Shown piece after piece: positions 43,176 through 59,237 of a DNA stretch of 64,000 bases. Where the stretch lies: positions 1 to 64,000 of IMG/VR virus record IMGVR_UViG_3300042892_005961; one strand, 5' to 3'. The notes under the pieces were generated by a model. That model saw nothing but the letters and a program-made list of their open reading frames with translations. It was not told where the DNA came from and made no database searches. The position numbers were made by a program, and so were the translations under genes. Each line of letters opens with the position of its first letter. Position 1 is the first letter of the stretch.

Positions 43176-43405
43176 TGAACTTCAAATTTTTTAAAGGTGA
43201 TGAAACACCTACATTATGTTTTACACCTCATAGATATGAACCAGAAAATGCTGAATTTTGTTTTCAATTTGGTGATGAAGAACCCGTTGTTTTCGCTTCG
43301 GGTCCAAATGATTGTAGTATTCGTTTAAGTCCAACGAGTAATACTGAAATGACGTTTAATGATAATGGTAGAGTATTTAAATTATTCGCAAGAGAAAGAC
43401 AATAA
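43175..43405 (+). CDS. hypothetical protein, N-terminal FKFF motif
   Basis: Starts MNFKFFKG. Confidence 0.65.
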   Translation: MNFKFFKGDETPTLCFTPHRYEPENAEFCFQFGDEEPVVFASGPNDCSIRLSPTSNTEMTFNDNGRVFKLFARERQ

Positions 43406-43406
43406 T

Positions 43407-43649: not shown

Positions 43650-43650
43650 T

Positions 43651-44271: not shown

Positions 44272-44882
44272 GTTATCAATACCCAAAACATTTTAAGTAC
44301 CCAGAAGGAGAACGTTATTTCTTTTTAAATCATGTAGATTCATGGAAACATTTCTTACCTAACTATGGTGATGAACCAAGAGTGTGTTTAGAGATAGGTG
44401 CATTGTATGGTGGATCTTCAGTTTATATTTTAGATGAATTCTGTAAAAAAGAAGGTTCACATCATTATATAATGGATATCAATACAAATGAATTTATTGA
44501 AAATAATATTAAACCATATAAAGATAAGGTAACATATATTTTAGGTGAATCGGCCGATAGTTTTAAAACATTTAACCATAATGGTGAAACTAAAGAGTTT
44601 TTAGACTTTGTTTACATAGATGGTAATCATATGTGTAAATATGTTTTAGAAGATGCTGTAAATGCATTTTACTGTTTGAAAGATTATGGTTATATTATCT
44701 TTGATGATTACGGTGGAGGACTTGAACAAGATCAATATTTACAAGTTAAAACTGGTGCTGACGCGTTTTATCATGGATATCACAAATATTTAGAAATAGT
44801 GTATAACGGTTATCAAGTCATTATGAAAAAAATAAATTATATAAATGAAAATGATTTAAAAGAAAATTATTATAAAGTATGA
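44268..44882 (+). CDS. class I SAM methyltransferase (Methyltransf_24-like)
   Basis: LEIGALYGGS, DFVYIDGNH, IIFDDY. Confidence 0.85.
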   Translation: MSYQYPKHFKYPEGERYFFLNHVDSWKHFLPNYGDEPRVCLEIGALYGGSSVYILDEFCKKEGSHHYIMDINTNEFIENNIKPYKDKVTYILGESADSFKTFNHNGETKEFLDFVYIDGNHMCKYVLEDAVNAFYCLKDYGYIIFDDYGGGLEQDQYLQVKTGADAFYHGYHKYLEIVYNGYQVIMKKINYINENDLKENYYKV

Positions 44883-45874
44883 AAATATTAATTACAGGAG
44901 TTGCGGGATTGTTAGGTTCAAGATTATCGGATTACATTATTGAAAATCATTCAGATGTTTATATCGTTGGTATTGATGATATGAGTGGTGGATATAGGGA
45001 GAATGTTAATCCAAAGGTTGAGTTATGGGAAATGAATTTAGTTAATGGTAATATTAGTGAATGTTTTGAAAGACATCAATTTGATTATGTTTACCATTTC
45101 GCAGCATATGCCGCTGAGGGATTATCCCCATTCATTAGAACATATAACTATCAAAACAATTTAGTTGCAACGTCGCGCATTATTACACAATGTATTAAAC
45201 ACAATATTAAAAGATTAGTATTCACGTCTACATTGGCGGTATATGGTCACCAGGATGGTAATATATTTGACGAAATTCAAGTACCTAAGCCTATTGACCC
45301 GTACGGTGTTGCTAAATATGGTTGTGAAATGGATATACAGATTGCTGGTGAGCAACATGGACTTGATTGGTGTATTATTAGACCACACAACGTTTACGGT
45401 GTTAAACAGAACGTATGGGACAAATATAGAAACGTATTAGGTATATGGATGTATCAACATACAATCAACGAACCTATGACAATATTTGGTGACGGTACAC
45501 AAACAAGAGCTTTCAGTTATATTGATGACAGTCTTGAACCATTATGGAAAGCATCTCAAGATATTAGAGCATCAAAAGAAATAATTAACTTAGGTGGTGT
45601 TAAAGAATACTCAATAAACGAAGCTAATGAAATTTTACGTGAAGTAGTTGGTGGAGGTGAGGTAAAATATTTTGAAGGTAGACATGAAGTGAAACACTCA
45701 ATACCTACTTGGCAAAAATCAATTGACTTATTAGACTTTGAACATAAAACAGATTTGAAGGAAGGTTTAACTAAAATGTGGGAGTGGGTTAAAAGTCAAC
45801 CAGTTAGAGAGAGGTTCGTGTGGCCGTTCTACGAATTAGATAAAGGAATTTATTCATTTTGGAAAACAAAGTAA
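44879..45874 (+). CDS. NAD-dependent nucleotide-sugar epimerase/dehydratase
   Basis: ITGVAGLLG, YGVAK, RPHNVYG, GDGTQTRAFSYIDD. Confidence 0.92.
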   Translation: MKILITGVAGLLGSRLSDYIIENHSDVYIVGIDDMSGGYRENVNPKVELWEMNLVNGNISECFERHQFDYVYHFAAYAAEGLSPFIRTYNYQNNLVATSRIITQCIKHNIKRLVFTSTLAVYGHQDGNIFDEIQVPKPIDPYGVAKYGCEMDIQIAGEQHGLDWCIIRPHNVYGVKQNVWDKYRNVLGIWMYQHTINEPMTIFGDGTQTRAFSYIDDSLEPLWKASQDIRASKEIINLGGVKEYSINEANEILREVVGGGEVKYFEGRHEVKHSIPTWQKSIDLLDFEHKTDLKEGLTKMWEWVKSQPVRERFVWPFYELDKGIYSFWKTK

Positions 45875-45875
45875 T

Positions 45876-46898
45876 ATGAAAAAAGTATTAGTATTAGGTG
45901 CTGGTGGATTCATCGGTTCACATTTAGTAAAAAAATTAAAAGAACAAGGATGTTGGGTTAGAGGAGTTGATTTAAAATATCCTGAATATGAAACAAGTGT
46001 TGCAGATGATTTTGTTATTCGTGATTTAAGAGACCCAAGAAATGTTGAGTCTGTGATTAAATTAGAGTCATATAATAATCATCCTTTACCATATAAGTTT
46101 GACCTTTATCCATTCTCAGATAAATTACAATTTGATGAAGTGTATCAATTAGCTGCCGATATGGGTGGAGCTGGTTATATTTTTAGTGGTGATAATGATG
46201 CAAATGTGATGCACAATTCTGCAATGATTAATTTAAATGTTGCATATGAATGTTCAAGACAGGAAGTTAAAAAAGTATTTTATTCTTCTTCCGCTTGTAT
46301 GTATCCAGAACATAATCAATTAGATCCAACTAATCCAAATTGTGAAGAATCTTCAGCCTATCCAGCAAATCCAGATTCAGAATATGGATGGGAAAAATTA
46401 TTTAGTGAAAGAATGTTTTTAGCTTTTCATAGAAATTATAATTTAGATATTAGAATTGCTAGATTTCATAACATATTTGGACCATATGGAACATATAAAG
46501 ATGGAAAAGAAAAGGCACCTGCAGCTATATGTAGAAAAGTTGCTGAGTGTTTAGATGGTGGTGAAATTGAAGTATGGGGAGATGGTGAACAAACTCGTTC
46601 TTTTTTATACATCGATGAATGTATTGAAGGAGTATTAAAATTAATGGAATCAGATTTTATTGGTCCAGTAAATATTGGTAGTGATGAAATGGTAACCATA
46701 AATGATATGGTAAATAGTGTAATCGACATTAGTGGTAAAACGGTACATGTTAAACATGTCGACGGTCCAACTGGTGTTAGAGGTAGAAATAGTGACAATA
46801 CTTTAATTAAAGAAAAATTAAATTGGTCACCAAAACAACCTTTATATGATGGACTAATAAAAACATTTAATTGGATAAACAAAGAAATTATTAAATGA
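45876..46898 (+). CDS. GDP-mannose 3,5-epimerase-like extended SDR
   Basis: GAGGFIG, QLAADMGGAG, YSSSACMYP, YGWEK, KEKAPAAICRK, GVRGRNSDN. Confidence 0.88.
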   Translation: MKKVLVLGAGGFIGSHLVKKLKEQGCWVRGVDLKYPEYETSVADDFVIRDLRDPRNVESVIKLESYNNHPLPYKFDLYPFSDKLQFDEVYQLAADMGGAGYIFSGDNDANVMHNSAMINLNVAYECSRQEVKKVFYSSSACMYPEHNQLDPTNPNCEESSAYPANPDSEYGWEKLFSERMFLAFHRNYNLDIRIARFHNIFGPYGTYKDGKEKAPAAICRKVAECLDGGEIEVWGDGEQTRSFLYIDECIEGVLKLMESDFIGPVNIGSDEMVTINDMVNSVIDISGKTVHVKHVDGPTGVRGRNSDNTLIKEKLNWSPKQPLYDGLIKTFNWINKEIIK

Positions 46899-47470
46899 AA
46901 ATAGAATTTATTATACCGACATACAATAGACCTCATCAATTAATGGGTGTGATAAGTTCTATATATTCACAAACATCACCTAATTGGAAAATACACGTTG
47001 TTGCAGATGCTGTTTATGATGGTTATCAAAAAGTAAAAGATTATTTTAACGGTGACGATAGAATAAGATTTACAGAATTAAATGGTCCACATAAAGATTG
47101 GGGACATACCCCAAGAAATTATGGATTACAACATGCAACGGAAGAATGGGTTGTTATGACAGGTGACGATAATTACTATATGCCAATCTTTGTCGAAGAT
47201 TTTTTAAATTCTGTGGAAAAAAACACACATTTTGTTTATTGTAATATGGTTCACAATTGGGTTAATAATCAATACATTGTTTTAAATTCAATTCCTAAAT
47301 TAGGTGCCATAGACATCGGTAATTTTATGTCTAAAACAGATTTGGCTAAAAATATAAAATTAGATATTACATATGAACAATCTGATGGTTTATTTGTTGA
47401 GGAGTATCTAAGAAAATATCCTCACGGAACTATTAAAAAAATAAATAAACCACTATACGTACATAATTAA
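46895..47470 (+). CDS. GT2 glycosyltransferase
   Basis: IIPTYNR, RNYGL, GDDNYY. Confidence 0.85.
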   Translation: MKIEFIIPTYNRPHQLMGVISSIYSQTSPNWKIHVVADAVYDGYQKVKDYFNGDDRIRFTELNGPHKDWGHTPRNYGLQHATEEWVVMTGDDNYYMPIFVEDFLNSVEKNTHFVYCNMVHNWVNNQYIVLNSIPKLGAIDIGNFMSKTDLAKNIKLDITYEQSDGLFVEEYLRKYPHGTIKKINKPLYVHN

Positions 47471-47473
47471 ATT

Positions 47474-47953
47474 ATGAAACAACAAACAAAACAAGAATTA
47501 GAGGATTGGTATAAAAAAAATGATCCTTGGTCATATAAAACAACTAATGATGATATTATTAGAAAAGAAAAAATATTATCATTATTAGAAAACTATAATA
47601 CGGCATTAGATATTGGTTGCGGTGAAGGATTTATTACGACAGATTTACCCGCAAACAAAATTTACGGAATAGAATTATCTGATAATGCGTCCTTAAGATT
47701 ACCAAATAACATTATTAGATTAATGAAACCAATGGAAAAATATGATTTGGTAATGACAACCGGTACATTATATACTCAATATAATAATGAACAAATAAGA
47801 AATTGGATTTTTGAGTCATCAAAAAAACACATACTGGTTGGTGGAATTAAAGATTGGATGTTGTGGTCCGACTATGGTAAAATAATAAAAGAAATAGAAT
47901 TTAAGTATAGAGAATATACACAAATAATTAGATTATATGAGGTTACTACATAA
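47474..47953 (+). CDS. SAM methyltransferase (NodS-like)
   Basis: DPWSY, ALDIGCGEG, YDLVM..GTLY. Confidence 0.75.
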   Translation: MKQQTKQELEDWYKKNDPWSYKTTNDDIIRKEKILSLLENYNTALDIGCGEGFITTDLPANKIYGIELSDNASLRLPNNIIRLMKPMEKYDLVMTTGTLYTQYNNEQIRNWIFESSKKHILVGGIKDWMLWSDYGKIIKEIEFKYREYTQIIRLYEVTT

Positions 47954-48449
47954 TATAGGAGATATAAGACATTCAAATTATCACACTCGTGATCAAATTT
48001 TAAAATCAAACGAACCATTAGGTTTTGATGGAATATATCTTAATGTTTATGAAAACAAGGATGTGTTAAAAGAGAAGATCGGAATTTTTTTTGTAATGGG
48101 TAATTACATCGGTGGAGACAATTCATTTGATTTAAAATATGTACCGAAGTTAGAAAAATATTGTACATGGGAACAAATACATGAAATGTGTGAAGAGTTT
48201 GATTTTGAAATAGGTTGGCATACTTGGAGTCATCCAGATTTAAGGACATTATCAAAAGAAGAAATAATAAAGGAAATTACTCCCCCATTTCCTATGAGAT
48301 ATTTTGCATATCCATACGGACACTTTAATGATTTAGTTATCGAATGTGTTAAGGAAGTTGGTTTTGAAAAAGCATGGAGTGTTCACCAAGGTTCAAGAAA
48401 TCCAAATGAAAAGGATTATAATTTTAAAATATACAGACCATACTTATGA
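47937..48449 (+). CDS. polysaccharide deacetylase (NodB/CE4-like)
   Basis: GFDG, FFVMG, EIGWHTWSHPDL, FAYPYG. Confidence 0.85.
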   Translation: MRLLHNIGDIRHSNYHTRDQILKSNEPLGFDGIYLNVYENKDVLKEKIGIFFVMGNYIGGDNSFDLKYVPKLEKYCTWEQIHEMCEEFDFEIGWHTWSHPDLRTLSKEEIIKEITPPFPMRYFAYPYGHFNDLVIECVKEVGFEKAWSVHQGSRNPNEKDYNFKIYRPYL

Positions 48450-49180
48450 TTAATTTTGAACAACTTAAGAAAGAATATAACGAAAAAGGTATTATAGTTA
48501 TGTCAAATGTTTTTACGTCAGAAGAGTGTGACGAAATTAAAAAGAATGCTTATTCTGTGAGAGATGAGGATATTAAAAAAAGTGGTTATCCACACGTACC
48601 AAGTGAAAAGAAAAATGGTAAAAGATTGTTAGTTTTTTTTCCGTCACTTGTTAACGAATATCTGAATAAAATTAGAACGGATGAAAGGATGATTAATTTG
48701 GTTAAAAATTTTATTGGTGATGATGTTAAACAAATAAATAATCAAATTTATTTTAGAGAAAGTGGTGACCAAGATCAATTTGCGTGGCATCAAGACGTTA
48801 TGTTTAGAGAGGATATAAATTTCAATAACGATGTAGAGGATGATTATTTCCAAACAATAATTGCCGTTGATGATATAACAGAGGACAATGGTGCAATTGA
48901 ATTTATTGATGGTTCACATAAGACAATGAGGATTCCGATTCCAAATAATTTACGAGAATTTAAAAGAGGTGACTTAAGTGGTAAGAAATATACCGCAAAT
49001 AAAGGTGATGTTTTGATATGGTCAGTTTTATCTGTTCATGGTAGTGAGCCAAATCAATCAAAGAAAGATAGAATGACATATATGAATGGATTCTGTAGGT
49101 CAAAATCAACAAAAACATATCCTGATTACTTGAAAAATGGTGAAATAATTCGTAATATTAATGTAAACCATATACCATGA
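48446..49180 (+). CDS. PhyH-family 2OG-Fe(II) dioxygenase
   Basis: WHQD, NGAIEFIDGSH, GDVLIW, HGSEPN..R. Confidence 0.9.
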   Translation: MINFEQLKKEYNEKGIIVMSNVFTSEECDEIKKNAYSVRDEDIKKSGYPHVPSEKKNGKRLLVFFPSLVNEYLNKIRTDERMINLVKNFIGDDVKQINNQIYFRESGDQDQFAWHQDVMFREDINFNNDVEDDYFQTIIAVDDITEDNGAIEFIDGSHKTMRIPIPNNLREFKRGDLSGKKYTANKGDVLIWSVLSVHGSEPNQSKKDRMTYMNGFCRSKSTKTYPDYLKNGEIIRNINVNHIP

Positions 49181-49791
49181 GTACTATAACAGTTGTGATT
49201 GCTTCATATCAATATGGACATTTAGCCGCACATTGTATTGAAAGTGTTTTATGTCAATCGAGAAAACCTGATAAGATTTTATTTGTAGATGACGGTGTTG
49301 GTGATTGTAGTCACCTACCAAAAATATATCCTGAAGTTGAATATGTGTTGAGGGAAAAAAACATGGGTACTGTTGCAAATTTTCAGGATATGTTGATGAG
49401 AGTGACAACCGATAAATGTATGTTTTTAGGTGCAGATAATTGGTTAAGGGCAGATACTTTAGAAATATTAGACAAAATTGATGCTGATGTTGTTGTTTAT
49501 GATATAGTAGTTACCGGCGATTCAAAAAAAGGTTTACATGATAGACACGGGAATGAAATGACATCATATCAAGGGGATTTATATTGGACTAGATATAAAC
49601 AACATCATGGCTCAATGTTATATAAAACAAAATTAGCACAATCAATTGGTTACAAGGGAACCGGTGGTAAACATTCAGAAGAAGATTTATATCTTTTTAG
49701 AGAAATGAAAAATCGCGGTGCAAAAATGGAATGGGTTAAAGAAGGTCTTTTATATTACAGAAGACATAGAGAAAATTTTATAAAAACATAA
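49177..49791 (+). CDS. GT2 glycosyltransferase
   Basis: VVIASY, VDDG, GADN, EEDL, YYRRH. Confidence 0.85.
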   Translation: MSTITVVIASYQYGHLAAHCIESVLCQSRKPDKILFVDDGVGDCSHLPKIYPEVEYVLREKNMGTVANFQDMLMRVTTDKCMFLGADNWLRADTLEILDKIDADVVVYDIVVTGDSKKGLHDRHGNEMTSYQGDLYWTRYKQHHGSMLYKTKLAQSIGYKGTGGKHSEEDLYLFREMKNRGAKMEWVKEGLLYYRRHRENFIKT

Positions 49792-49792
49792 T

Positions 49793-50905
49793 ATGAAAAT
49801 AAGTTTAGTGCTAGCGGTTTACAATAAATTAGATTTAACAACGGAATGTTACAAAAGATTACGTCAGTTATATCCCAACGCACCATTAGTTATTAGTAGT
49901 GGTGGATCAAGTGATGGAACCAAAGAATGGTTAGAATCATTAGAAGATGAAAACCTATCTTTCTTTCATGATGATGATCGTTTAACATTCTCAGAAACAT
50001 ATAACGCAGGTATTGATCTTGTTGATACGGAAAAAATTGTTCTTATCCATAACGATATGGTTATTGGTGAAGGTTTCTTAGAGGCAATAGAAAGACTATT
50101 AACTGAAAATATGATCTTATCCTACACAACAATTGAACCTCCTATTTTTAAAGGTCATTCAAGACCTGGTAAAGTATTGTTAGATTTGGGTAGTGGGTTT
50201 GATAACTTTGATCAAACTAATTTTAATAATTACATTCAAAAATGGAAAGATACTGATACACTACACGATGGTGCGGTCTTCTTTATGTCAGCATATAAGA
50301 AAACATTTATTGACTTAGGTGGTTTTGATGGATTTAGTTTTGTTCCATGTTTTTGTGAAGATGATGACTTTTTAATCCGTGCGAAACTAAAAGGGTATGA
50401 ATTAAAAACTTGTGATTCTGCAATTACCTATCATTTTGTTTCGCAGACATCAAGGTTCAGTGATGAAATGAAAGATGTACGTGGAACAATTGAAGCTCAT
50501 TCAATTAGAAACTTTATAAGAAAATGGGGGATTAGTATTCCAATGTTTAACGCGATGGATTATCAAACAACAGATAACTTTACATACGTTAAGAAAATTG
50601 TTGGTGTTAAATTAAGTAGTACCAAACATATTGAATTATTGGAACCATTCTTTGATAAGATTGAGATTGATGAGTTCCCAACGGAATATGTTGAAAAGGA
50701 ACAAGGATCTACTCGTTACAATTTAACTAAGAAATTTGAAGATGTTAATGATGTTGATATTAAAGTATTTGTTACCGATAACTTTAATCAGGATGATTTT
50801 AACATGGTCAACGCATTGAGAGTATCTCTTGATGATTACGGACCTGGTGTTTATGAAAATGGTAATATAACAGTGTTGATAATAGATAAGGATCAAAAGG
50901 CATAA
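49793..50905 (+). CDS. GT2 glycosyltransferase
   Basis: GSSDGT, YNAGI, IHNDM, GGFD, EDDDF. Confidence 0.88.
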   Translation: MKISLVLAVYNKLDLTTECYKRLRQLYPNAPLVISSGGSSDGTKEWLESLEDENLSFFHDDDRLTFSETYNAGIDLVDTEKIVLIHNDMVIGEGFLEAIERLLTENMILSYTTIEPPIFKGHSRPGKVLLDLGSGFDNFDQTNFNNYIQKWKDTDTLHDGAVFFMSAYKKTFIDLGGFDGFSFVPCFCEDDDFLIRAKLKGYELKTCDSAITYHFVSQTSRFSDEMKDVRGTIEAHSIRNFIRKWGISIPMFNAMDYQTTDNFTYVKKIVGVKLSSTKHIELLEPFFDKIEIDEFPTEYVEKEQGSTRYNLTKKFEDVNDVDIKVFVTDNFNQDDFNMVNALRVSLDDYGPGVYENGNITVLIIDKDQKA

Positions 50906-51528
50906 TTGCCGACGTGTTTAACCATCATACTTAAGTATGTGTCAATAAACACTTCATATCCTAATTCTCTTAACTTACCTAATAAAATAAAGTCTTCACC
51001 GAAGTAATCTTCGGTGTTTTCTTTATATCTAAATTCAAAATATGGTTTTTCTAATTTATCGAATGTATCTAATTTCATTAACATACATCCCATACCTACT
51101 CCCTCCACTTTAACGAGGTCTTCCTGTATTTCCATTGGTAACCAACTATTCCAATCATTTAAATCGGTGTATGCAACCGTTTTAAGGGGTTTTGAACGTC
51201 TCATATAGTTACATGCTACAATGTCCTTATTGTGTTCTAAAAGACGTAATGCGGTGGTTGGTGGGAACATCATATCACTATCTAACCAAAGGACATAATC
51301 TGAATTTACTTCCTTTGCTTTCTTAATAAGATTGTTTCTTTGATTTAATAATATTGTACTTGAATCGTAGAATAAATAAGCATCTATACCTGCCTCTCTT
51401 GTTGTATTAAATAATTGAGTTATACAATAAGAGAACTGACTATGAACAGTATCCCTCGTTGGGACTAATATTGATAACTTAAGTGGTTTTACCTCCCACA
51501 TTGAGCTATTGTTGATTGATTTACTCAT
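50893..51528 (-). CDS. GT-A fold glycosyltransferase-like protein
   Basis: RN.L, LWLDSDM, GMGCMLM, GEDF, HVG. Confidence 0.75.
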   Translation of the reverse strand: MSKSINNSSMWEVKPLKLSILVPTRDTVHSQFSYCITQLFNTTREAGIDAYLFYDSSTILLNQRNNLIKKAKEVNSDYVLWLDSDMMFPPTTALRLLEHNKDIVACNYMRRSKPLKTVAYTDLNDWNSWLPMEIQEDLVKVEGVGMGCMLMKLDTFDKLEKPYFEFRYKENTEDYFGEDFILLGKLRELGYEVFIDTYLSMMVKHVGNYAF

Positions 51529-51968
51529 AATCCCGGTATGTTGTCTGTTATGGTGTTATTTTGATATGTTATGTTTCTACCCGCTTCAACCATTTCTTCA
51601 ACCCTTTTAGATATAAGTTGAAAGTCTTTAATTGGGAGATTACTAATTGTTGTGTAAGTTAATCTTGAATATGTATTTGTTAGTAAGATATCTACAGCAC
51701 CAATCCTTGCCCATTTCTCAATAAAACACATTCTTAATATGTTCTCATCCCCACATAATAAACCTTCAATACGAACCTTATCGTACGTGTTTAATATCTC
51801 CACAAGTATTTGATGTTCCCTTCTGTAATAGGGTATAAAAGATAAAAAATACGTTAATTTGAGACGTTTAACAAACTTGATGAGTCTTTCTCTATCAAAG
51901 TTAATTCCGTTCCATTTAACGTACTGTAATTCGTATTTTGAGGGGTGATATTTATAACGTAAATCCAT
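51525..51968 (-). CDS. hypothetical protein
   Basis: 147-aa ORF. Confidence 0.6.
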   Translation of the reverse strand: MDLRYKYHPSKYELQYVKWNGINFDRERLIKFVKRLKLTYFLSFIPYYRREHQILVEILNTYDKVRIEGLLCGDENILRMCFIEKWARIGAVDILLTNTYSRLTYTTISNLPIKDFQLISKRVEEMVEAGRNITYQNNTITDNIPGL

Positions 51969-52005
51969 ACATTATAATATAATAAAAAAAGGTGAAAATG
52001 TAAAA

Positions 52006-52224
52006 TTAATATGTACCTGAACCTGATAAACCACCAAAAGATGCTCCTTCAGCAGTTTCAGATCCACTTGGGATACTTGCAACCCCCGAATACGATCTAT
52101 TACGACCAACACCTAAAGTTGAATTTAAACCCACCTCTATTGAACCGGCAGTAGCTGTTAATCCTAAAACTACACTAATTCTTCCCATACTTACTTCGGT
52201 TCCCGTTGCTGGTACTGTACCCAT
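52006..52224 (-). CDS. small Gly/Ser/Thr-rich putative virion protein
   Basis: MGTVPATGTEVSMG start; downstream of the tail fibre; TATTTAT at 52255-52261. Confidence 0.55.
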   Translation of the reverse strand: MGTVPATGTEVSMGRISVVLGLTATAGSIEVGLNSTLGVGRNRSYSGVASIPSGSETAEGASFGGLSGSGTY

Positions 52225-52306: not shown

Positions 52307-53653
52307 TTATTTTATTTTAGCTTCTAAAGCTTCAACACGAATTAATAATTCTTTGTTTGTTTCAATTAACAAAGCAACTAATTTTTCATATTTAACAGCC
52401 ATATAACCGTTGTCTCTTGTTGTTACAATTTCAGGTAAAACTGCATCAATTTCTTGTGCAATAACTCCTATATCGTGACCTTCGTTCTCATGTATACCCG
52501 GCATTTCTTTCCAATCAAAATAATAACCGTTGATTTGTTTTAATATATCTAAAGAACCTGTAATTGAATGAATGTTTTCTTTTAGTCTTTCATCAGAACT
52601 GTAAAATGCAATAACGTCATTTGTCGCTCTAATTAAACCGACAGTTGTTGGTGTTGACGTACCTACACCCAAAGCTCCTGTTAATGATACTGTTGTTCCG
52701 TTATCAGTTATTGATGAGTTACCCACAGTCGATGCTGATGTGAATTTAGTCAATATATTGGTAGTACCTGATGTTGTGATTGAAGTTCCTGAAGAACCAT
52801 TTGATCCTGAAGAACCTGATGTTCCTGAAGAACCATTTGATCCTGAAGAACCTGATGTTCCTGATGAACCTGAAGAACCACTTGTTCCTGAAGAACCTGA
52901 TGTTCCTGAAGAACCGTTAGAACCTGAAGAACCACTTGTTCCTGAAGAACCACTTGTTCCTGAAGAACCTGAAGAACCATTAGATCCTGAAGATCCACTT
53001 GTTCCTGAAGAACCATTAGATCCTGAAGATCCACTTGTTCCTGAAGAACCTGAAGAACCACTTGTTCCTGAAGAACCTGAAGAACCACTTGTTCCTGATG
53101 TTGCTGCAGTATATGATGTTCCATTAATGAATAATGAACCAGTCACAACCATACTACCACTAACAGACATGCTACCTGTGATAGATTGACTACCAGTAAT
53201 ATTTTGACTACCTACTAATGTACTTTGACTTGATCCTGCAGAACCTGTTGGAGGAACTGGTAGACCTACCGCCGCCAAACTTGCTGAAGTTTGTACAACT
53301 TGAGTACCTATTTGGATTGTACCATCAGTGTTTGTACTGATAGCTTTTATACCACCAATAAAGATAGATCCTGTAGATACATAGATGTCCTTCCACCAAT
53401 GTGTCGCATCACCCAAATCGTAAGCATTATTAACAGATGGGATTATAGATCCGCTAATTGTTTGGTTTGCTGTGAATAGGTTACTACCTGTGGTAGCGAA
53501 ACGAGCAGAACCCGTTGTGTTTAGGGATAGTGCGTTTGTGGATGTACCACTAATCGCAGCATTTATTGTTCCGTCTACCGTAAGATCTCCAAAAAAACGA
53601 GCCGAGCCCGATACGTTTAGTGATCCAGAGACATTTGCGTCAAATATTTTCAT
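52307..53653 (-). CDS. tail fibre/spike protein with Ser-Gly repeats and C-terminal peptidase S74 intramolecular chaperone
   Basis: YDLG..WKDIYV beta repeat; (T/S)SG repeats; YSSDERLKENI...IGVIAQE...VKYEKLVALLIE. Confidence 0.85.
   Translation of the reverse strand: MKIFDANVSGSLNVSGSARFFGDLTVDGTINAAISGTSTNALSLNTTGSARFATTGSNLFTANQTISGSIIPSVNNAYDLGDATHWWKDIYVSTGSIFIGGIKAISTNTDGTIQIGTQVVQTSASLAAVGLPVPPTGSAGSSQSTLVGSQNITGSQSITGSMSVSGSMVVTGSLFINGTSYTAATSGTSGSSGSSGTSGSSGSSGTSGSSGSNGSSGTSGSSGSNGSSGSSGTSGSSGTSGSSGSNGSSGTSGSSGTSGSSGSSGTSGSSGSNGSSGTSGSSGSNGSSGTSITTSGTTNILTKFTSASTVGNSSITDNGTTVSLTGALGVGTSTPTTVGLIRATNDVIAFYSSDERLKENIHSITGSLDILKQINGYYFDWKEMPGIHENEGHDIGVIAQEIDAVLPEIVTTRDNGYMAVKYEKLVALLIETNKELLIRVEALEAKIK
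52787..53101 (-). repeat. 9-bp tandem coding repeat, ~35 x (SSG/TSG/SNG)
   Basis: Units such as cctgaagaa / cctgatgtt / ccacttgtt; Gly at every third residue. Confidence 0.95.
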
Positions 53654-53713
53654 AGGTTATATTGTTATACCCTAATAAATACTTTGAACTTTCAAATTGT
53701 ATAAAAAATATCT

Positions 53714-55843
53714 CTAAATTGGTAGAAGTTTTTCGAGTTTTTCTATAACTTCTCCTCCTGTAATAGTTTTTGAACATTCAAATTGGTTTTCTGTCTTTTC
53801 ATGAATAGGACACCAATTCCAATTACCTGGATCAAATTCATGGTTAGACCAACAACTATTACATACATTTTTATTGATTACCCTTGTTACACCGTCTAAT
53901 GGTTCTAAATCTACGTCAGTAAAACCTGAAATAATTACTGTAGGGGTTCCTGACGCCCAAGATAACCAACTTAATCCACTGCTTATACCTATAAATAATT
54001 CAGACTCTTGTAAAACTTTTATGATATCGGTCAGTTTACCCTTAGGTTGTACCGTAATTCCTTTAGGATGTTTGTTACCCATGTAACCATCTTCCTCACG
54101 AGATAAGAGTCTGACTTCATAATTCTTAGCTTTAAGATAATCTACCACCTCCTGCCAACCGGTTGGATTATTCCAATATTTACATTGAGCTGTTGAATGA
54201 ATAGCAATTGAAACCAATTTTTTCTTCTTCTTACCTAATTTCTTTAATTTAGGTTTAAGTTCCACATAATCCAATCCGAGAATATCGGATGCCACTTTCA
54301 TTAATGGTTCCTTTTTAGGGTCGTTGTAATGTTTTGTATAATCAATTTTACGTTCATTAGTATAAAATAACCCCAAACGATATAACGCGTGTATATTATT
54401 TACGTTTGATCCAGGTAAAACAAACTCAATATCGGGATACTGATCTTTGAATAGATCATTATTGAATGATGAACAAATTACTTTACATTTATTATCTGTT
54501 CTAAATTTCTCAACATATGGTATCCAAGCTAAACTATCTCCTAATGATTTAGATTCAAAACATATCATTACTCTTTTATCCGTTAAATCAAAATTATACT
54601 CTTGGTAGAAATTATTATCAACACCTTTAATTTTAATTAACCAATCTACATAGTATTTTTTAGACGATCTAACCCAATGATTACTCTTTAAATTAAACTC
54701 AAATTCTAATTTACCATTTTTCTTATCTATAAATTGAACGTTGTAAAGATAATCACCTTCTTCTAATACCTCAACAAATGGACCATCAACAAAATGAATG
54801 TTTGTTCTTCTATTTGTGTTAACATTATTTCTTGATAGTTTATTCTTTCTTCTAAACTCATTCATTTCATCTTTAAGTTCCTGTGTGAATATTTCCAATC
54901 CTTGATGACGTACTTCAACTACTTCATTTTGTTTATATTCACCGAGTCTTTCTAATTTGTATTCACCCTTTTTAACTGTATGGAATTTTTTATATGTTCC
55001 ATAGTTAACTTCAATTAAATAATCCTTATCAGCTGGTTGTTCTGAAAATCCGGATATAAAATGAATAAACAATTGTCCCGCATCATCAACACCTAAATAA
55101 GTTTGTAAACGAGCACCATTTTTTAATATACCATTCCTATTCCATACCGCAAACATATTAAGTTCATTATCATTAGGGATATACTTACTAACAAATATAC
55201 TATTGGTAACCTTCTTAATTGATTGGTATAATTGTTTTTCTAATTGCCATCTATCGGGTTTACCCTTGAAGTATTCTTCTTTACTATTAATAAGACTAAT
55301 CATCTTTAACGCAACATCGGTCTTAATTGAAAAGATATAAGCTGAACTATATGGATTACTTTCTTTTGTTGATCCTTCTGAATACTCGTAAACTACGGCA
55401 TCATTACTTCTAATATATTCCATAAATGCTTGACGATACTGAATTTCATCTGGTAAGTTATCATACTCTAAGAAATGAATATATTGTTTACCTAATTGTT
55501 TAACAAGATTGAAAGCATTTTTCATTGTCAACCAAATTGCATAGTCGTGATGAAAATCTATTTTATTAGTTATCTTATACGTTCCCATATCAGTCCATCT
55601 ATCACTATTAATACCATACTCAGCAAAATCCTTTTCTAATAATATGTCGTTATTACCATCATATAGATAGTAATCCGCTAACACTTGTATCTCAGGTGAA
55701 ACTGCATAATGTCCACATAATATAATGGGACAATTATAAACCTTTAAACTTATAAGTAATTTCTTTAAAACATTTTCTTTATCTTTATTATCAGGCCAGC
55801 AGTCAACTACAAAAACATCATCATTAAATTGTGTATATCCCAT
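53714..55843 (-). CDS. TibC/Aah-like (autotransporter O-heptosyltransferase, GT9-related) glycosyltransferase with N-terminal extension
   Basis: SKSLGDSLAWIPY, HSTAQCKYWNNPTGW, FIGISSGLSWLSW, VIISGF, CNSCW...CP...FECSK Cys cluster. Confidence 0.8.
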   Translation of the reverse strand: MGYTQFNDDVFVVDCWPDNKDKENVLKKLLISLKVYNCPIILCGHYAVSPEIQVLADYYLYDGNNDILLEKDFAEYGINSDRWTDMGTYKITNKIDFHHDYAIWLTMKNAFNLVKQLGKQYIHFLEYDNLPDEIQYRQAFMEYIRSNDAVVYEYSEGSTKESNPYSSAYIFSIKTDVALKMISLINSKEEYFKGKPDRWQLEKQLYQSIKKVTNSIFVSKYIPNDNELNMFAVWNRNGILKNGARLQTYLGVDDAGQLFIHFISGFSEQPADKDYLIEVNYGTYKKFHTVKKGEYKLERLGEYKQNEVVEVRHQGLEIFTQELKDEMNEFRRKNKLSRNNVNTNRRTNIHFVDGPFVEVLEEGDYLYNVQFIDKKNGKLEFEFNLKSNHWVRSSKKYYVDWLIKIKGVDNNFYQEYNFDLTDKRVMICFESKSLGDSLAWIPYVEKFRTDNKCKVICSSFNNDLFKDQYPDIEFVLPGSNVNNIHALYRLGLFYTNERKIDYTKHYNDPKKEPLMKVASDILGLDYVELKPKLKKLGKKKKKLVSIAIHSTAQCKYWNNPTGWQEVVDYLKAKNYEVRLLSREEDGYMGNKHPKGITVQPKGKLTDIIKVLQESELFIGISSGLSWLSWASGTPTVIISGFTDVDLEPLDGVTRVINKNVCNSCWSNHEFDPGNWNWCPIHEKTENQFECSKTITGGEVIEKLEKLLPI

Positions 55844-56511
55844 TATCTTTTTCTTATTAAAATTATTCCATTAAGGAAGGTTATTGATTCTATATCAGTT
55901 CTACAATCAGGTTGTACTTTATTTGAATATGGTATTAGTTTATCTTCTCGTCGATCCCATACTGCGGCTTGATCATCTAAGTTCTCAACACCTCTAAAGT
56001 TAATATCATCCGTTAATTTCTTGAAGTATTCCATCATACTCTTAGGGTCATTTAAACCTCCACCGTACCAAGGGAAATAGGATGTTGCAACATCTTCAAC
56101 AATGTACATACCACCCGATTTAACGTATTGAAATAGTGTTTTAAATGAATAAATAACATGTTCATTCAAATGTGATCCGTCATCTAATATAAAATCAAAT
56201 GGACCATATTCATTTGAAATTTGATTTAAAAACTTATCATCATCTTGTGAACCTATTTCAACAAAAATTCTATCTTCCTCATATTTTTTACAATCAGGAT
56301 TGATGTCAATACCTAAAATATTAGAACGATAATAATAATCCTTCCAAGTTAATAGTGATTTACCATCTAAGACACCAATCTCCAATATGTTTAATTTATC
56401 ATATCTGTTAAATGGTAAATACTTTTCATATTTAACACAATAATTGTGATTGTCGGAAGACTTATCAGTTCCGTATACTTTAGCCAAATTATCTAATGTA
56501 CTCATTTCCAA
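55843..56511 (-). CDS. class I SAM methyltransferase (sugar O-methyltransferase-like)
   Basis: YGTDK, LEIGV, GIDI, GSQ, DFILDDGSH, GGMYIVED. Confidence 0.85.
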   Translation of the reverse strand: MEMSTLDNLAKVYGTDKSSDNHNYCVKYEKYLPFNRYDKLNILEIGVLDGKSLLTWKDYYYRSNILGIDINPDCKKYEEDRIFVEIGSQDDDKFLNQISNEYGPFDFILDDGSHLNEHVIYSFKTLFQYVKSGGMYIVEDVATSYFPWYGGGLNDPKSMMEYFKKLTDDINFRGVENLDDQAAVWDRREDKLIPYSNKVQPDCRTDIESITFLNGIILIRKR

Positions 56512-59237
56512 AAATATATCATTTGTAAACTGTTATTATTACCCATAAATAATAGATATGAATTGAATCCTAATCCATTCATTTTATTTATAAAATTTGT
56601 TCTTAATTCATCATCAAAATCAAAATGACTATGATGATATTCCATTGCTATGGTTTTAACTTTTTGTAAGTTCTCATCACTGATACCCGCAAATGCTGCA
56701 TGTTCTGCTCCTTCAATATCGACCTTAAGGAAATCAATATGATCCACCAAACCACTTTCAAAAAGATAGTTTAATGTATATGTTTTAACACTATATCCTT
56801 CCTGACCTTCAATACCAAAAACATTTGATCCTCCTAAGTGAGTACTCTCATATAAATTCAATTCTCCAATTTCATGTGCAGCAGCCGCATTAAATAATAT
56901 TGAACGTGGGTCAGCATTAAGTGACAGTAATTTAAAATATCGTCTATCTGGTTCAAATGAAATTACTTTACTCGCACCTTGATGATATGCCCACCTATTG
57001 AAGATACCCATATTACCTCCCAAATCAACCACAATATCTCCTTCATGTATTCTTCTTTCATTACCACCTTTATAGTAATCGTGTAAGTTAAAAATTTCAT
57101 GGTAGATAGCTCTTGCCCACCCATACTTATCTGCAACTTCAATGGTTCCACCTTGTACATCTTTAATATCACCTAAGTTCTCTAACTTATATGTGTTAAC
57201 ATCTAATGATGTGTAAAATTGTTCTGATTTATAAAAACTATTATCACGTTTCATCTTAATGAAGTCCATCATGAAATCAGACATCTGTGCATTCTTATTA
57301 CCGTGGAAATAAAGAATTTGATTCTTATCTTTTGGTATTGCTTGGTACCCAAATATTCTATTGAAATTCTGAGGTCCTTCCTCGTTCCAAAACTTTAAGA
57401 AATGATGTTGCGTTTCATTTGTCATTCCATCATCACCATCGTAAGATGATGTATCAAAATTTGATAGTGGTAAATGTTTTTTAAAGTTGTATTTCCATCT
57501 CATCACATTATCAATACCCTCATCGTTCCATAGGTATAAACGTTTGTAATCTTTACCTCCGTCTTCCATTACTTTTACATAATGACTAAGAATCTCTTCA
57601 AACCACCATTTACATTCTTTATTATAGATATACATACAAACGTGCATATAAGGTTGTTGTTTTTGAACTCCCCATTCTTTTGCAACTTGTTCGTTAAATA
57701 GTTGTGAATTTTTTCCATCATCATACCAACCAAAGAATTCTTCCTGAACATGTATATCGGATATCGGATAGTTTTCAATCTGTTTGAAATAAGATTTAAT
57801 ATTATCTACGTTGTAGTTTACGACAACATCACCATCCATCCAAACGTAATTATCAAATCCTTCATTAATAGATTCAATACATGCCATTTGTTTCCAATAC
57901 CATTTATCGTGTTCAGATATCTTTGGTGTTGTTATCGTTCTTTTGATAATATTTGGATAGTCAAATGGAACCTCACAATCAATACCGTATACTATAATCT
58001 TACGTTTAGAAAATTCTAATAATGATTGAACTAACTTTTCAATAACCGGCATGTATCCGATATTACCAGTTGTGATGAAAGCAAAGTCATCAAATTTATT
58101 TTCAAGTATATCTGAAGCACCCTTTGCAACAGTACTCCAATTAAACTCTTCATGTATTTCTTTTGATTCAACCACAGCAAATGATTTATGTCGTTTATAT
58201 TCGTTAAATGCACTTAACATTTGTTCTCCCAAATTATTCCAATCAGGTTCACAATATTCACCAGGGAAATCTTTATGTTCCACATTAGCAGGTTTTAATC
58301 CATCTATCTTTACAGGAATACCTTTACCTTCCGCAAACTGTAACTGACCTCCCCAATCTGAATAGATCGACGGTGTTCCACAAGCCATAGCTTCAATCAA
58401 CGGTAAGTTCCATCCTTCACTACGTGCACATGTAACAAACACATCACCCTCTTGCAAATATTTTACATATTCTTCCTGTGGTGTGAATTTTATAAACTTG
58501 ATATTCGTTGTATCTATGTTGTGATGTTTAACTCTTTCTTCGGTTGTTTTAAGTCCGTCAAATGGATATGGGTTTTCAACTGATGCAATTAACTCCACAT
58601 CATCTCTATCTTTAAATGTCTCACTAAACGCTCTTAAAACCTCTGTAGTTCCCTTTCTATAATCCCATCTACCAAAATGTAAGAACCTAAATTTGTCCTT
58701 CTTTGATGTCTTAGTTAACGGTTTAAATGTATCTACATCAACTCCCTCAGGAACTATTGATATTTTATGTGATGGATAACCCTGTTCAACCAAACAATCA
58801 AATTGCCATTGTGTTGGAACCCATACCTCGTCAAAGTAATGTAATCTTTTAAAGAAATTATCGGGATAACGTGTTGATTCCCAAACATTATAAGCTATTT
58901 TATAACCATCATAGTCATCATAAAAATAACGATTGTTAGTATCAACCAAAACAATATGAACGTCAGGTTTATAACCACCATCATATCCATAGATTGGGTA
59001 ATCCGATCTACTACCATCCGAATTATTAAGAGTTTGAAGAATTAACATATCCTTCATCTCATCTGTAATATAAGGTTCATTATCGTGTGGGGTATCATTC
59101 ATACCCTTCCAACCACCTCCGATTGTTGAATTCCTAACTTTAACTGTGTGGTATTTGTTCAGAGCACAAAAAAAGGACTTTGCGTGATTAGCATATCCTG
59201 TTACTCCGATAAAACATGTATGTGCAAGTATTTTCAT
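56502..59237 (-). CDS. fusion: GT4 glycosyltransferase + GT-A-like domain + FkbM methyltransferase
   Basis: TGYANH, RKG, SEGWNLPLIEAMACG; central WMDGD; C-terminal VVDLGGNMG, SFEP, LKVDIEGAE. Confidence 0.85.
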   Translation of the reverse strand: MKILAHTCFIGVTGYANHAKSFFCALNKYHTVKVRNSTIGGGWKGMNDTPHDNEPYITDEMKDMLILQTLNNSDGSRSDYPIYGYDGGYKPDVHIVLVDTNNRYFYDDYDGYKIAYNVWESTRYPDNFFKRLHYFDEVWVPTQWQFDCLVEQGYPSHKISIVPEGVDVDTFKPLTKTSKKDKFRFLHFGRWDYRKGTTEVLRAFSETFKDRDDVELIASVENPYPFDGLKTTEERVKHHNIDTTNIKFIKFTPQEEYVKYLQEGDVFVTCARSEGWNLPLIEAMACGTPSIYSDWGGQLQFAEGKGIPVKIDGLKPANVEHKDFPGEYCEPDWNNLGEQMLSAFNEYKRHKSFAVVESKEIHEEFNWSTVAKGASDILENKFDDFAFITTGNIGYMPVIEKLVQSLLEFSKRKIIVYGIDCEVPFDYPNIIKRTITTPKISEHDKWYWKQMACIESINEGFDNYVWMDGDVVVNYNVDNIKSYFKQIENYPISDIHVQEEFFGWYDDGKNSQLFNEQVAKEWGVQKQQPYMHVCMYIYNKECKWWFEEILSHYVKVMEDGGKDYKRLYLWNDEGIDNVMRWKYNFKKHLPLSNFDTSSYDGDDGMTNETQHHFLKFWNEEGPQNFNRIFGYQAIPKDKNQILYFHGNKNAQMSDFMMDFIKMKRDNSFYKSEQFYTSLDVNTYKLENLGDIKDVQGGTIEVADKYGWARAIYHEIFNLHDYYKGGNERRIHEGDIVVDLGGNMGIFNRWAYHQGASKVISFEPDRRYFKLLSLNADPRSILFNAAAAHEIGELNLYESTHLGGSNVFGIEGQEGYSVKTYTLNYLFESGLVDHIDFLKVDIEGAEHAAFAGISDENLQKVKTIAMEYHHSHFDFDDELRTNFINKMNGLGFNSYLLFMGNNNSLQMIYFWK

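What the first reader, a model, noticed from the sequence alone, without database searches (positions are those of the whole stretch)
52307..55843. Proline-free Gly-X-Y Ser/Thr tail fibre next to a TibC/Aah-like protein O-heptosyltransferase
Seen: the fibre has ~35 consecutive SSG/TSG/SNG triplets (Gly every third residue, no Pro) and a peptidase S74 chaperone, which implies a trimer. The adjacent gene has TibC/Aah-type motifs, including the Cys cluster. Established: TibC/Aah heptosylate Ser residues in repeats of bacterial autotransporters. Inference: the phage densely O-glycosylates a collagen-like or polyglycine-II fibre, with the upstream methyltransferase and GT4-FkbM fusion elaborating the glycan. 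This would be a virion glycan-shield system.
Basis: partly seen in the sequence, partly recalled or inferred. Interest (0 to 1): 0.7.

Follow-up and report, generated by a model that had tools for sequence, protein, structure and literature searches.

The report
Phage heptosyltransferase operon beside Ser-rich collagen-like fibre
A large freshwater phage carries a true relative of the bacterial enzymes that add heptose sugars to serines of adhesins, placed just upstream of a proline-free, serine-rich collagen-like tail fibre, and many distant phages keep this pairing, so the phage probably sugar-coats its own fibres, though nobody has measured this.

Summary
Window 52307-53653(-) encodes a 448-aa fibre with exactly 35 uninterrupted X-Y-Gly triplets (SSG x19, TSG x11, SNG x5; no Pro, no charged residue) and a C-terminal peptidase S74 chaperone domain. 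Window 53714-55843(-) encodes a 709-aa protein. Its C-terminal half is a genuine TibC/Aah (BAHT) family member: TIGR04414 scores 285 bits against a cut-off of 200, and TibC 4RAP matches at E 2e-55. The catalytic Asp, three of four sugar-binding residues and all four iron-finger Cys are kept; Arg-286 is not. Its N-terminal half has a GT-A / nucleotide-sugar-transferase fold.

New here: in 61 non-identical phage loci, 20 have a proline-free S/T-rich Gly-X-Y gene directly downstream of the transferase. Of 37 loci with enough flank, 23 have one within 5 genes. This holds across deep branches (37-98% identity) and different domain fusions, and it mirrors the bacterial tibC-tibA order. Methyltransferase and extra transferase domains are repeatedly fused to the BAHT domain. 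Two relatives encode HldA/HldC/HldD-like ADP-heptose genes.

Fibre O-glycosylation is therefore the best reading (about 0.6) but is unproven. The sugar identity, the exact acceptor serines and a "shield" role remain inference. I found no paper describing this. It is a new variant of known kinds.

The parts
52307..53653 (-). Fibre gene, 448 aa: N-terminal Ser-rich part (aa 1-184), Gly-X-Y run, short distal part, and an S74 chaperone. The predicted mature chain ends at S353.
   Evidence: ORF; Pfam S74 and Collagen; PHROG tail fibre / baseplate families, best E 2.9e-39; S353/K358
52787..53101 (-). 35 uninterrupted triplets (SSG/TSG/SNG), aa 185-289, with no Pro and no charged residue. They hold 30 [S/T/N]-S-[G/A] sites.
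52424..52597 (-). Peptidase S74 intramolecular chaperone domain (aa 353-410), which implies a trimer that cleaves itself.
53714..55843 (-). Two-domain glycosyltransferase gene, 709 aa.
   Evidence: AlphaFold2 model with mean pLDDT 86
53729..54793 (-). BAHT (TibC/Aah-type) O-heptosyltransferase domain, aa 351-705, carrying D436, T551, K555, W626 and Cys 661/664/678/690.
54830..55819 (-). N-terminal addition: a GT-A / nucleotide-diphospho-sugar-transferase fold (aa 9-243) plus a beta-sandwich (aa 244-338).
   Evidence: model; Foldseek; VIA-align Z 15.3 to mannosylglycerate synthase; GT25/WavE lead
55843..56511 (-). Methyltransferase, 222 aa (Methyltransf_24 / O-methyltransferase type). Its stop overlaps the transferase start.
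56502..59237 (-). 911-aa three-domain protein: GT4 (about aa 37-381), a middle domain with a DGD motif and a GT8-like lead (about aa 385-700), and an FkbM methyltransferase (about aa 728-902).
50893..52224 (-). Three genes kept downstream of the fibre in close relatives: a 72-aa Gly/Ser-rich ORF (52006-52224), a 147-aa ORF (51525-51968), and a 211-aa Anp1/GT2-like transferase (50893-51528).
40534..50905 (+). Convergent sugar cluster: 2 GT4, 4 GT2, 2 methyltransferases, 2 NAD epimerases/dehydratases, a polysaccharide deacetylase and a PhyH oxygenase. It may supply or extend the glycan; its target is unknown.

Best explanation
This is a phage-encoded protein O-glycosylation operon whose substrate is the fibre gene that follows it, and probably also the four other [S/T]-S-G repeat fibres of the same genome. 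In the infected cell's cytoplasm, the BAHT domain transfers a nucleotide-activated heptose, most likely ADP-heptose, onto serines of the fibre chain. The best acceptor candidates are the 30 [S/T]-S-G sites of the repeat. The fused GT-A-like domain, the GT4 and GT8-like domains and the two methyltransferases then extend and O-methylate the sugar. The S74 domain trimerises the chain and cuts itself off. The product is a thin, glycan-covered, collagen-like whisker on the tail.

Shown: family membership of the enzyme, the anatomy of the fibre, conserved linkage, domain fusions, and heptose-pathway genes in relatives.

Inferred: that transfer happens, the identity of the sugar, which serines are used, and what the glycan is for (helix stabilisation, protection, or binding).
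For: (1) The enzyme is a BAHT. TIGR04414 scores 285.5 bits against a cut-off of 200, TibC 4RAP matches at E 2e-55, and it is 34-37.5% identical over 98% of its length to annotated plasmid BAHTs.

(2) The functional residues named in PMC4358343 are kept and are invariant in 31 phage homologues: Asp-110 = D436, Thr-226 = T551, Lys-230 = K555, Trp-305 = W626, and Cys-339/342/358/370 = C661/664/678/690. Position 300 is Ser, as in Aah.

(3) The gene order matches the bacterial paradigm. tibC and BAHT genes lie directly upstream of their autotransporter substrate. Here the transferase is followed after 60 bp by the fibre.

(4) The linkage is conserved. Of 61 non-identical phage loci, 20 have a proline-free S/T-rich Gly-X-Y gene immediately downstream. 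Of 37 loci with at least 2.5 kb on both sides, 23 have one within 5 genes and 7 more have another Gly-X-Y or S74 fibre; 7 have none. This linkage is seen in several deep, well-supported subclades of the phage BAHT tree and with quite different architectures.

(5) Fusions support a shared pathway. FkbM, other methyltransferases, the GT-A-like domain and the 'mid' domain are each fused to the BAHT domain in other phages, in varying order.

(6) The mapped TibA sites are N-S-G and T-S-A. The repeat unit offers T-S-G and S-S-G 30 times.

(7) A sugar supply exists in relatives. The complete 335-kb relative G001 and record G006 carry adjacent HldA-, HldC- and HldD-like genes, with best family hits TIGR02198, TIGR02199 and TIGR02197. 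G004 carries a GmhA-like gene. The syntenic part of G001 lies in the portion missing from the window's own record.
Against: There is no direct evidence of modification. Arg-286 of TibC contacts the adenine, and its mutation abolished or strongly reduced activity; here it is Ile-607 and is not conserved in the phage clade, so the donor nucleotide, or even the sugar, may differ. The heptose genes are patchy. They are absent from the held 211 kb, from the 97%-complete G002 and from the 100%-complete G005, and all of the hits are below the curated cut-offs. The close relatives share synteny by descent, so the counts are not independent events. The genome holds five such fibre genes, so proximity to one is not very rare; a rough estimate is 10% within 5 genes. 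7 of the 37 informative loci show no fibre nearby. TibC acts on a folded beta-helix, not on a Gly-X-Y chain. The complex prediction gave no answer.
Confidence: 0.6

Rival explanations
1. The transferase does glycosylate virion proteins, but the Gly-X-Y run is not the acceptor. The targets would be serines in beta-structured, SGS-type segments, such as the fibre's N-terminal 184 aa or similar segments in other structural proteins, which are closer to the beta-helix repeats that TibC recognises.
For: TibC binds and modifies a beta-helix. The fibre's flanks carry repeated x-S-G-S-x motifs. In Microcystis phage Mel-JY01, the FkbM + GT-A-like + BAHT fusion lies next to a Ser-rich 'structural protein' that has SGS/ISSS motifs and no Gly-X-Y run. 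The 37-39% identity group sits near S74 fibres and an Ig-repeat S/T-rich protein without [S/T]SG runs.
Against: The most frequent and closest neighbour by far is a proline-free [S/T]SG run, and 30 of the 33 [S/T/N]-S-[G/A] sites of the mature fibre lie in the run.
Confidence: 0.15
2. The whole 20-kb sugar island remodels the host envelope (LPS, capsule or host adhesins) during infection. This could serve, for example, to block superinfection. On this reading the fibre gene is a bystander embedded in the island.
For: The island holds many GT2/GT4 genes, epimerases and a deacetylase of the polysaccharide type. Comparable clusters in cyanophages have been read as host-surface genes; this rests on my own knowledge and was not checked here.
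Against: The BAHT family consists of soluble protein-serine transferases, and the LPS heptosyltransferase models score only 27-37 bits against cut-offs of 185-467. The fibre stays next to the BAHT gene even where the rest of the island differs or is absent. The genes are co-oriented and overlap or lie close together.
Confidence: 0.12
3. The enzyme and the heptose genes of relatives serve DNA hypermodification, that is, heptose added to hydroxymethyl-pyrimidines.
For: Phage GT-B enzymes working with a cytidylyltransferase add one or two heptoses to 5hmC (bioRxiv 10.1101/2023.12.21.572611).
Against: Those enzymes are like T4 beta-glucosyltransferase. This one has the beta-barrel, the iron finger and the residues of the protein-directed TibC family. 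It sits in a fibre context, not in a nucleotide-metabolism context.
Confidence: 0.03
4. The BAHT domain has been re-tuned to another donor sugar, so the fibre is glycosylated but not heptosylated.
For: Arg-286 is replaced. Most phage records with the gene lack heptose-pathway genes. The island encodes its own epimerases/dehydratases.
Against: Trp-305, which binds heptose O4, together with Thr-226, Lys-230 and an Aah-type Ser at position 300, is kept. HldA/C/D-like genes occur in two relatives of the same clade.
Confidence: 0.1

Closest known systems
Bacterial autotransporter heptosyltransferases (BAHT: TibC, Aah) with TibA / AIDA-I
   Same: The catalytic domain is homologous (34-37.5% identity, TIGR04414 above its cut-off). 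It has the beta-barrel, the catalytic Asp, Thr/Lys/Trp in the sugar pocket and the 4-Cys iron finger. The transferase gene lies directly upstream of a Ser-rich repetitive substrate gene, and the action is cytoplasmic.
   Different: It is encoded by a phage. A 345-aa GT-A-like part is fused to it. Arg-286 is lost. The neighbour is a trimeric tail-fibre-like protein with Gly-X-Y triplets and an S74 chaperone, not an autotransporter. It is accompanied by two methyltransferases and two or three more transferase domains.
Mycobacteriophage virion glycosylation (phage-encoded transferases modify capsid and tail-tube proteins)
   Same: A tailed phage glycosylates its own virion proteins with its own enzymes. 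This comparison rests on my own knowledge; papers found refer to it.
   Different: The enzyme families, targets (capsid and tube C-termini), hosts and sugars are all different. No BAHT and no collagen-like acceptor is involved.
BclA-type exosporium filaments of Bacillus and glycosylated collagen-like fibrils of giant viruses
   Same: These are collagen-like Gly-X-Y filaments with a C-terminal trimerising domain, whose Thr/Ser (or hydroxylysine) carry O-glycans that include methylated sugars (own knowledge, not tested here).
   Different: Those repeats contain proline (GPT). The enzymes are unrelated to BAHT, and the filaments are not part of a tailed phage.
Phage collagen-like tail fibres with an S74 chaperone (for example PHROG 'collagen like minor tail'; Gly-X-Y ORFs of cyanophage P-SSM2)
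   Same: They combine a Gly-X-Y run with a trimerising end, and S/T are frequent at X and Y.
   Different: Here the run has no Pro and no charged residues at all, and it is coupled to a protein glycosyltransferase operon.

Membership tests
BAHT (TibC/Aah) protein O-heptosyltransferases | Match to the family's equivalog model above its curated cut-off, and not to the LPS GT9 models | tested here: met
   TIGR04414 scores 285.5 bits against a cut-off of 200. The LPS heptosyltransferase models score 27-37 bits against cut-offs of 185-467.
BAHT (TibC/Aah) protein O-heptosyltransferases | Catalytic base Asp-110 | tested here: met
   D436 aligns with Asp-110 (with the D110A entry 4RB4 as a marker) and is invariant in 31 phage homologues. 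The residue's role is taken from PMC4358343.
BAHT (TibC/Aah) protein O-heptosyltransferases | ADP-heptose binding residues Thr-226, Lys-230, Trp-305 and Arg-286 | tested here: inconclusive
   T551, K555 and W626 are kept and invariant. Arg-286 aligns with Ile-607, and that column is variable.
BAHT (TibC/Aah) protein O-heptosyltransferases | 1Fe-0S iron finger formed by four Cys | tested here: met
   C661, C664, C678 and C690 align with Cys-339/342/358/370 and are invariant. Metal binding was not tested.
BAHT (TibC/Aah) protein O-heptosyltransferases | N-terminal flattened beta-barrel | tested here: met
   The phmmer alignment starts at TibC residue 29. The model shows only strands at aa 346-417. 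Pfam TibC_1st alone is below its cut-off, at 19.4 bits against 27.
BAHT (TibC/Aah) protein O-heptosyltransferases | Ring dodecamer built through the beta-hairpin thumb | not tested
   The thumb region aligns with a 3-residue deletion, and Phe-265/Val-266 correspond to Tyr/Met. The oligomeric state was not modelled, and the added N-terminal domain may change it.
BAHT (TibC/Aah) protein O-heptosyltransferases | The acceptor is the passenger beta-helix of an autotransporter encoded next to it | tested here: not met
   The neighbour is a fibre with Gly-X-Y triplets and S74. No autotransporter lies in the operon. The enzyme is a sequence member of the family with a different likely acceptor.
BAHT (TibC/Aah) protein O-heptosyltransferases | Transfers heptose from ADP-heptose to Ser | not testable with these tools
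   Support is only indirect: HldA/C/D-like genes in relatives.
Collagen-like triple helix | Gly at every third residue over a long uninterrupted run | tested here: met
   35 triplets, aa 185-289; Pfam Collagen scores 54.5 bits against a cut-off of 27.2.
Collagen-like triple helix | Stabilising Pro/Hyp or charge pairs at X and Y | tested here: not met
   The run contains only S, T, N and G.
Collagen-like triple helix | Adjacent trimerising domain | tested here: met
   S74 intramolecular chaperone at aa 353-410 with S353/K358.
Collagen-like triple helix | Actually forms a triple helix (as opposed to polyglycine-II or disorder) | not testable with these tools
   This needs circular dichroism or structure work on peptides with and without the sugar.
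Peptidase S74 (endosialidase-type chaperone) | Domain match plus a Ser-Lys pair at the cleavage site | tested here: met
   Pfam PF13884 scores 63.4 bits against a cut-off of 22 and 67.9 bits. The motif S353-D-E-R-L-K358 is present. Cleavage itself was not tested.

The most novel reading that the evidence does not exclude
A widespread lineage of large freshwater phages captured a bacterial adhesin heptosyltransferase and built around it a multi-enzyme line: BAHT + GT-A-like + GT4 + GT8-like + two methyltransferases, with its own ADP-heptose genes in some members. This line would put a methylated heptose-based glycan on nearly every triplet of proline-free Gly-Ser/Thr-Ser fibres. The sugar would then take over the helix-stabilising role that proline and hydroxyproline play in collagen, and it would give the virion glycan-clad whiskers. 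That would be a new kind of collagen chemistry and the first dense O-glycosylation system of tail fibres.
Probability: 0.25. Interest if true: 0.85.

Novelty: new variant of a known kind. Interest (0 to 1): 0.7.

Why it matters
Protein glycosylation of tailed-phage virions is known from only a few cases, and the BAHT family is known only as a virulence-linked modifier of bacterial autotransporters. This finding points to a second, phage-borne branch of that family with a new class of acceptor, in phages that recur in many lake metagenomes.

If it is confirmed, it would explain how proline-free Gly-X-Y fibres, which are common in aquatic phages, can be stable. It would add a sugar layer to phage-host recognition and to phage persistence in water. 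It would also offer a compact enzyme-and-tag pair, a short [S/T]SG repeat, for making glycoproteins in bacteria. A direct test is available, because E. coli makes ADP-heptose and one cultured phage (Mel-JY01) carries the fused enzyme.

Tried and rejected
1. Complex prediction of the BAHT domain (aa 345-709) with the mature fibre (aa 1-351) returned 'no answer', score 0.00. It counts neither for nor against binding.

2. Promoter and terminator scans of 50.5-60.2 kb found fewer sites than the shuffles did. They give no operon boundaries.

3. Pfam found nothing for the N-terminal 345 aa, for the middle domain of the 911-aa protein, or for the 72-, 147- and 256-aa neighbours. The GT8 and GT25/WavE labels come only from language-model leads at 0.87-0.92. 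The fold search cannot separate a GT-A transferase from a sugar nucleotidyltransferase: Z is 14-15 for both.

4. A megablast of 10 kb against isolated phages found nothing. Only 4 records of 50,697 hold a homologue of the transferase. The nearest isolate, Microcystis phage Mel-JY01, is distant.

5. Metatranscriptome contigs pile up only on the repeat, at 90-95% likeness, so they come from many relatives. Pieces on the transferase are at very low depth. This does not show transcription.

6. Six literature searches found no description of a phage BAHT. The library does not hold subscription-only papers.

7. One call failed on wrong coordinates.

8. The host was not identified. The reverse survey, asking how many [S/T]SG-fibre phages lack the enzyme, was not possible because low-complexity queries are filtered.
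Full report
**What the window is.** The window is the first 64 kb of a 211-kb IMG/VR virus record (GC 31%, estimated 63% complete). The record encodes a 994-aa tail sheath, baseplate wedge proteins and large fibre genes, so it is a large myovirus. It is about 80% identical in DNA, and colinear, with a complete 335-kb relative (G001). The match runs across that relative's ends. Near-identical sequence occurs in at least 16 lake or freshwater metagenome runs from many studies. The nearest cultured phage, Microcystis phage Mel-JY01, is only a distant relative.

**The observation.** Window 52307-53653(-) encodes a 448-aa protein.
- A script found exactly 35 uninterrupted triplets with Gly at every third residue, aa 185-289 (window 52787-53101). 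They are SSG x19, TSG x11 and SNG x5, with no Pro and no charged residue.
- Pfam gives Collagen (E 1e-14) and Peptidase_S74 at aa 353-410 (E 2.5e-17). PHROGs place the protein in tail fibre and baseplate families.
- The S74 Ser/Lys pair is present as S353 and K358. The mature chain would therefore be 353 aa, with 94 Ser and 52 Thr.
- Two ORFs inside the repeat (52740-53189 on the + strand and 52750-53124 in another frame of the - strand) are by-products of the repeat.

**The neighbouring enzyme.** Window 53714-55843(-) encodes 709 aa.
- Residues 351-705 match NCBIfam TIGR04414, 'autotransporter strand-loop-strand O-heptosyltransferase', at 285.5 bits against a cut-off of 200. LPS heptosyltransferase models reach only 27-37 bits.
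- phmmer against the PDB finds only TibC (4RAP and 4RB4), at E 2e-55 over TibC residues 29-386.
- Annotated plasmid BAHTs are 34-37.5% identical over 98% of the domain.
- I took the functional residues from the TibC structure paper (PMC4358343) and mapped them through the alignment. Catalytic Asp-110 = D436. Thr-226 = T551. Lys-230 = K555. Trp-305 = W626. Iron-finger Cys-339/342/358/370 = C661/664/678/690. All of these are invariant in 31 phage homologues.
- The stereoselectivity position, Pro-300 in TibC, is Ser here, as in Aah, which accepts both heptose epimers.
- One residue departs. Arg-286 contacts the adenine, and its mutation abolished or strongly reduced activity in TibC. It aligns with Ile-607, in a variable column.
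The enzyme is a BAHT by sequence, with a question mark over the donor's nucleotide.

- The first 345 aa have no Pfam match. They fold with confidence: pLDDT 81 alone and 86 in the full model. The fold is an alpha/beta domain (aa 9-243) plus a beta-sandwich (aa 244-338).
- Foldseek and VIA-align place the alpha/beta domain in the GT-A / nucleotide-diphospho-sugar-transferase fold. Mannosylglycerate synthase scores Z 15.3 and ArnC 14.3, but IspD-type nucleotidyltransferases score 14.4. I can name the fold, not the activity.
- The 911-aa upstream protein has a GT4 domain, an FkbM methyltransferase and a middle domain between them. The middle domain carries a DGD motif, and a language-model search relates it to GT8 enzymes; this is a lead only.
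- With the 222-aa methyltransferase, the co-oriented and closely packed gene string is: GT4 + GT8-like + FkbM, then methyltransferase, then GT-A-like + BAHT, then the fibre, then a 72-aa ORF, a 147-aa ORF and an Anp1/GT2-like transferase.
- A convergent cluster at 40.5-50.9 kb adds six more transferases, two methyltransferases, two epimerases/dehydratases, a deacetylase and a PhyH oxygenase.

**Linkage elsewhere.** A scan of viral contigs returned 79 loci that encode a relative of the BAHT domain, at 37-98% identity. I called ORFs, marked Gly-X-Y runs and S74 matches, and mapped the window's genes onto the loci.
- In relatives at 58% identity or more, the gene that starts 52-72 bp after the transferase is almost always a proline-free [S/T]SG protein. 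Its length varies widely, from 27 to 93 triplets and from 430 to 1080 aa, even where the enzyme is 98-100% identical.
- More distant groups have other layouts: a 693-aa enzyme followed by a 1467-aa repeat protein; 1013-1031-aa fusions followed, after one or two small genes, by proteins of 165-333 triplets with S74; a 1527-aa BAHT + FkbM fusion convergent with a 1957-aa protein of 560 triplets; and a 385-aa stand-alone enzyme three genes from a 52-triplet protein.
- The 37-39% identity group lies two to five genes from S74 fibres and from S/T-rich proteins, one of which is made of Ig repeats.
- The counts are as follows. Of 61 non-identical loci, 20 have such a gene directly downstream. Of 37 loci with at least 2.5 kb on both sides, 23 have one within five genes, 7 more have another Gly-X-Y or S74 fibre, and 7 have none.
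- On a tree rooted with four bacterial BAHTs, the 66 phage domains form one clade (support 99). The linkage appears in several of its deep, well-supported subclades.
- These are not independent events, and the window's own genome has five such fibre genes (52.3 kb and 103.8-122.2 kb). Chance proximity within five genes is therefore of the order of 10%, not negligible. Even so, the pairing persists while the flanking genes and the domain architecture change, which argues for function.
- The bacterial paradigm has the same order. The BAHT gene is immediately upstream of, and overlaps, its autotransporter substrate gene.

**Coupling to the other enzymes.**
- The FkbM domain is fused to the BAHT domain in L038, in L072 and in Mel-JY01.
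- The GT-A-like domain occurs before or after the BAHT domain, or in a separate GT4 protein.
- The 'mid' domain is fused to the BAHT domain in L034 and L039.
- Many metagenomic relatives of about 895-909 aa carry a different methyltransferase (PF13489/PF08241) fused at the N-terminus. In the viral-contig loci that carry an N-terminally extended enzyme (L005, L006), no match to the separate methyltransferase gene is seen.
- Repeated fusion, together with what looks like replacement by a non-homologous methyltransferase, indicates one pathway that makes a methylated, multi-sugar product.

**Sugar supply.**
- The held 211 kb has no cytidylyltransferase-like, SIS or NTP-transferase gene.
- The complete relative G001 (enzyme 83-97% identical) has an adjacent kinase, adenylyltransferase and epimerase. 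Their best family matches are HldE domain I, HldE domain II and ADP-glyceromanno-heptose 6-epimerase.
- Record G006 has the same three genes. G004 has a GmhA-like isomerase.
- All of these score below the curated cut-offs. Two nearly complete records lack them entirely.
- The G001 genes lie at 52.5-54.5 kb, inside the stretch (about 5.6-145 kb) that the window's record does not cover. Their absence here therefore says nothing.

**Mechanism proposed.** In the cytoplasm the BAHT domain transfers heptose to fibre serines. The TibA sites mapped in the paper are N-S-G and T-S-A, and the repeat offers T-S-G or S-S-G 30 times. The other domains extend and methylate the sugar. S74 trimerises the chain and cleaves at S353. 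A Gly-X-Y run without Pro or charge pairs should be a weak triple helix. Glycosylated Thr is known to stabilise a collagen helix in an annelid cuticle collagen (own knowledge, not checked here), so the sugar could be structural as well as protective. All of this step is inference.

**Rivals.**
- The acceptor may be the SGS-type beta segments rather than the triplets. The Mel-JY01 neighbour has such motifs and no Gly-X-Y run.
- The donor may not be heptose, because Arg-286 is lost.
- The island may act on the host envelope.
- The system may modify DNA. Phage heptosylation of 5hmC is known, but it uses T4 beta-glucosyltransferase-like enzymes.
- A complex prediction gave no answer.

**Novelty.** JGI's pipeline already labels these genes with the TIGR04414 name. 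Searches of the paper library found nothing on a phage BAHT or on its link to fibres. I rate this a new variant of known kinds (BAHT protein heptosylation, virion glycosylation, glycosylated collagen-like filaments), with interest 0.7.

Noticed in passing
window 60036-63421 (-): Four paralogous 2OG-Fe(II) oxygenase genes of the prolyl-hydroxylase-like family PF13640 lie directly upstream of the glyco-operon, interleaved with two unknown ORFs, and are kept in relatives. The fibres have almost no proline, so their substrate is unknown. Asn or Lys of the fibres, or sugars, are possible.
   Followed up: partly
window 40534-50905 (+): A convergent 10-kb sugar cluster: GT4 x2, GT2 x4, two methyltransferases, two NAD epimerases/dehydratases, a polysaccharide deacetylase and a PhyH oxygenase. 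It is partly conserved and partly swapped among relatives.
   Followed up: partly
own genome G000:C1 103818-122166 (outside the window): Four more [S/T]SG-repeat proteins of 492-1980 aa (34-75 uninterrupted triplets, 40-169 [S/T/N]-S-[G/A] sites each) form the main fibre module. They would be further substrates acting in trans.
   Followed up: partly
own genome G000:C1 103317-103475 (L002): A second S74 domain lies in a separate 204-aa open frame just downstream of the 1163-aa repeat fibre, not fused to it. It could be a split chaperone, a frameshift or an assembly error.
   Followed up: no
whole record G000: IMG/VR calls the record a 'provirus', but it is colinear with a complete 335-kb phage genome across that genome's ends, and the part I examined is all phage-like. 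The label looks doubtful.
   Followed up: partly
L091 (G001:C1 52660-55959): The HldA/HldC/HldD-like operon of the relative is preceded by a 128-aa cupin, and no GmhA was found in that complete genome. The cupin might be an isomerase or epimerase of the pathway.
   Followed up: no
L096 (Gluconobacter plasmid NZ_CP068421.1): A bacterial BAHT gene is followed by a 'Hint domain-containing protein' and not by an autotransporter. This hints that BAHT acceptors are more varied in bacteria too.
   Followed up: no
window 52788-53155: Four lake metatranscriptome assemblies give summed contig depths of about 850-3900 on the repeat alone, from hundreds of short contigs 90-95% alike. [S/T]SG-repeat coding sequence from many related phages is therefore abundant in these libraries, though DNA carry-over is not excluded.
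   Followed up: partly
L004 3324-4454; L026; L029: Some relatives carry a second, stand-alone BAHT paralogue of about 370 aa (60-64% identical) away from any fibre in view. The held part of the window's genome has only one BAHT.
   Followed up: partly
L049-L051 4583-6568: In a distant group, the fibre near the BAHT has 171 triplets of the YTG/ATG/DTG type, that is, a Thr in every triplet and not Ser. TibC was reported to modify Ser but not Thr.
   Followed up: no
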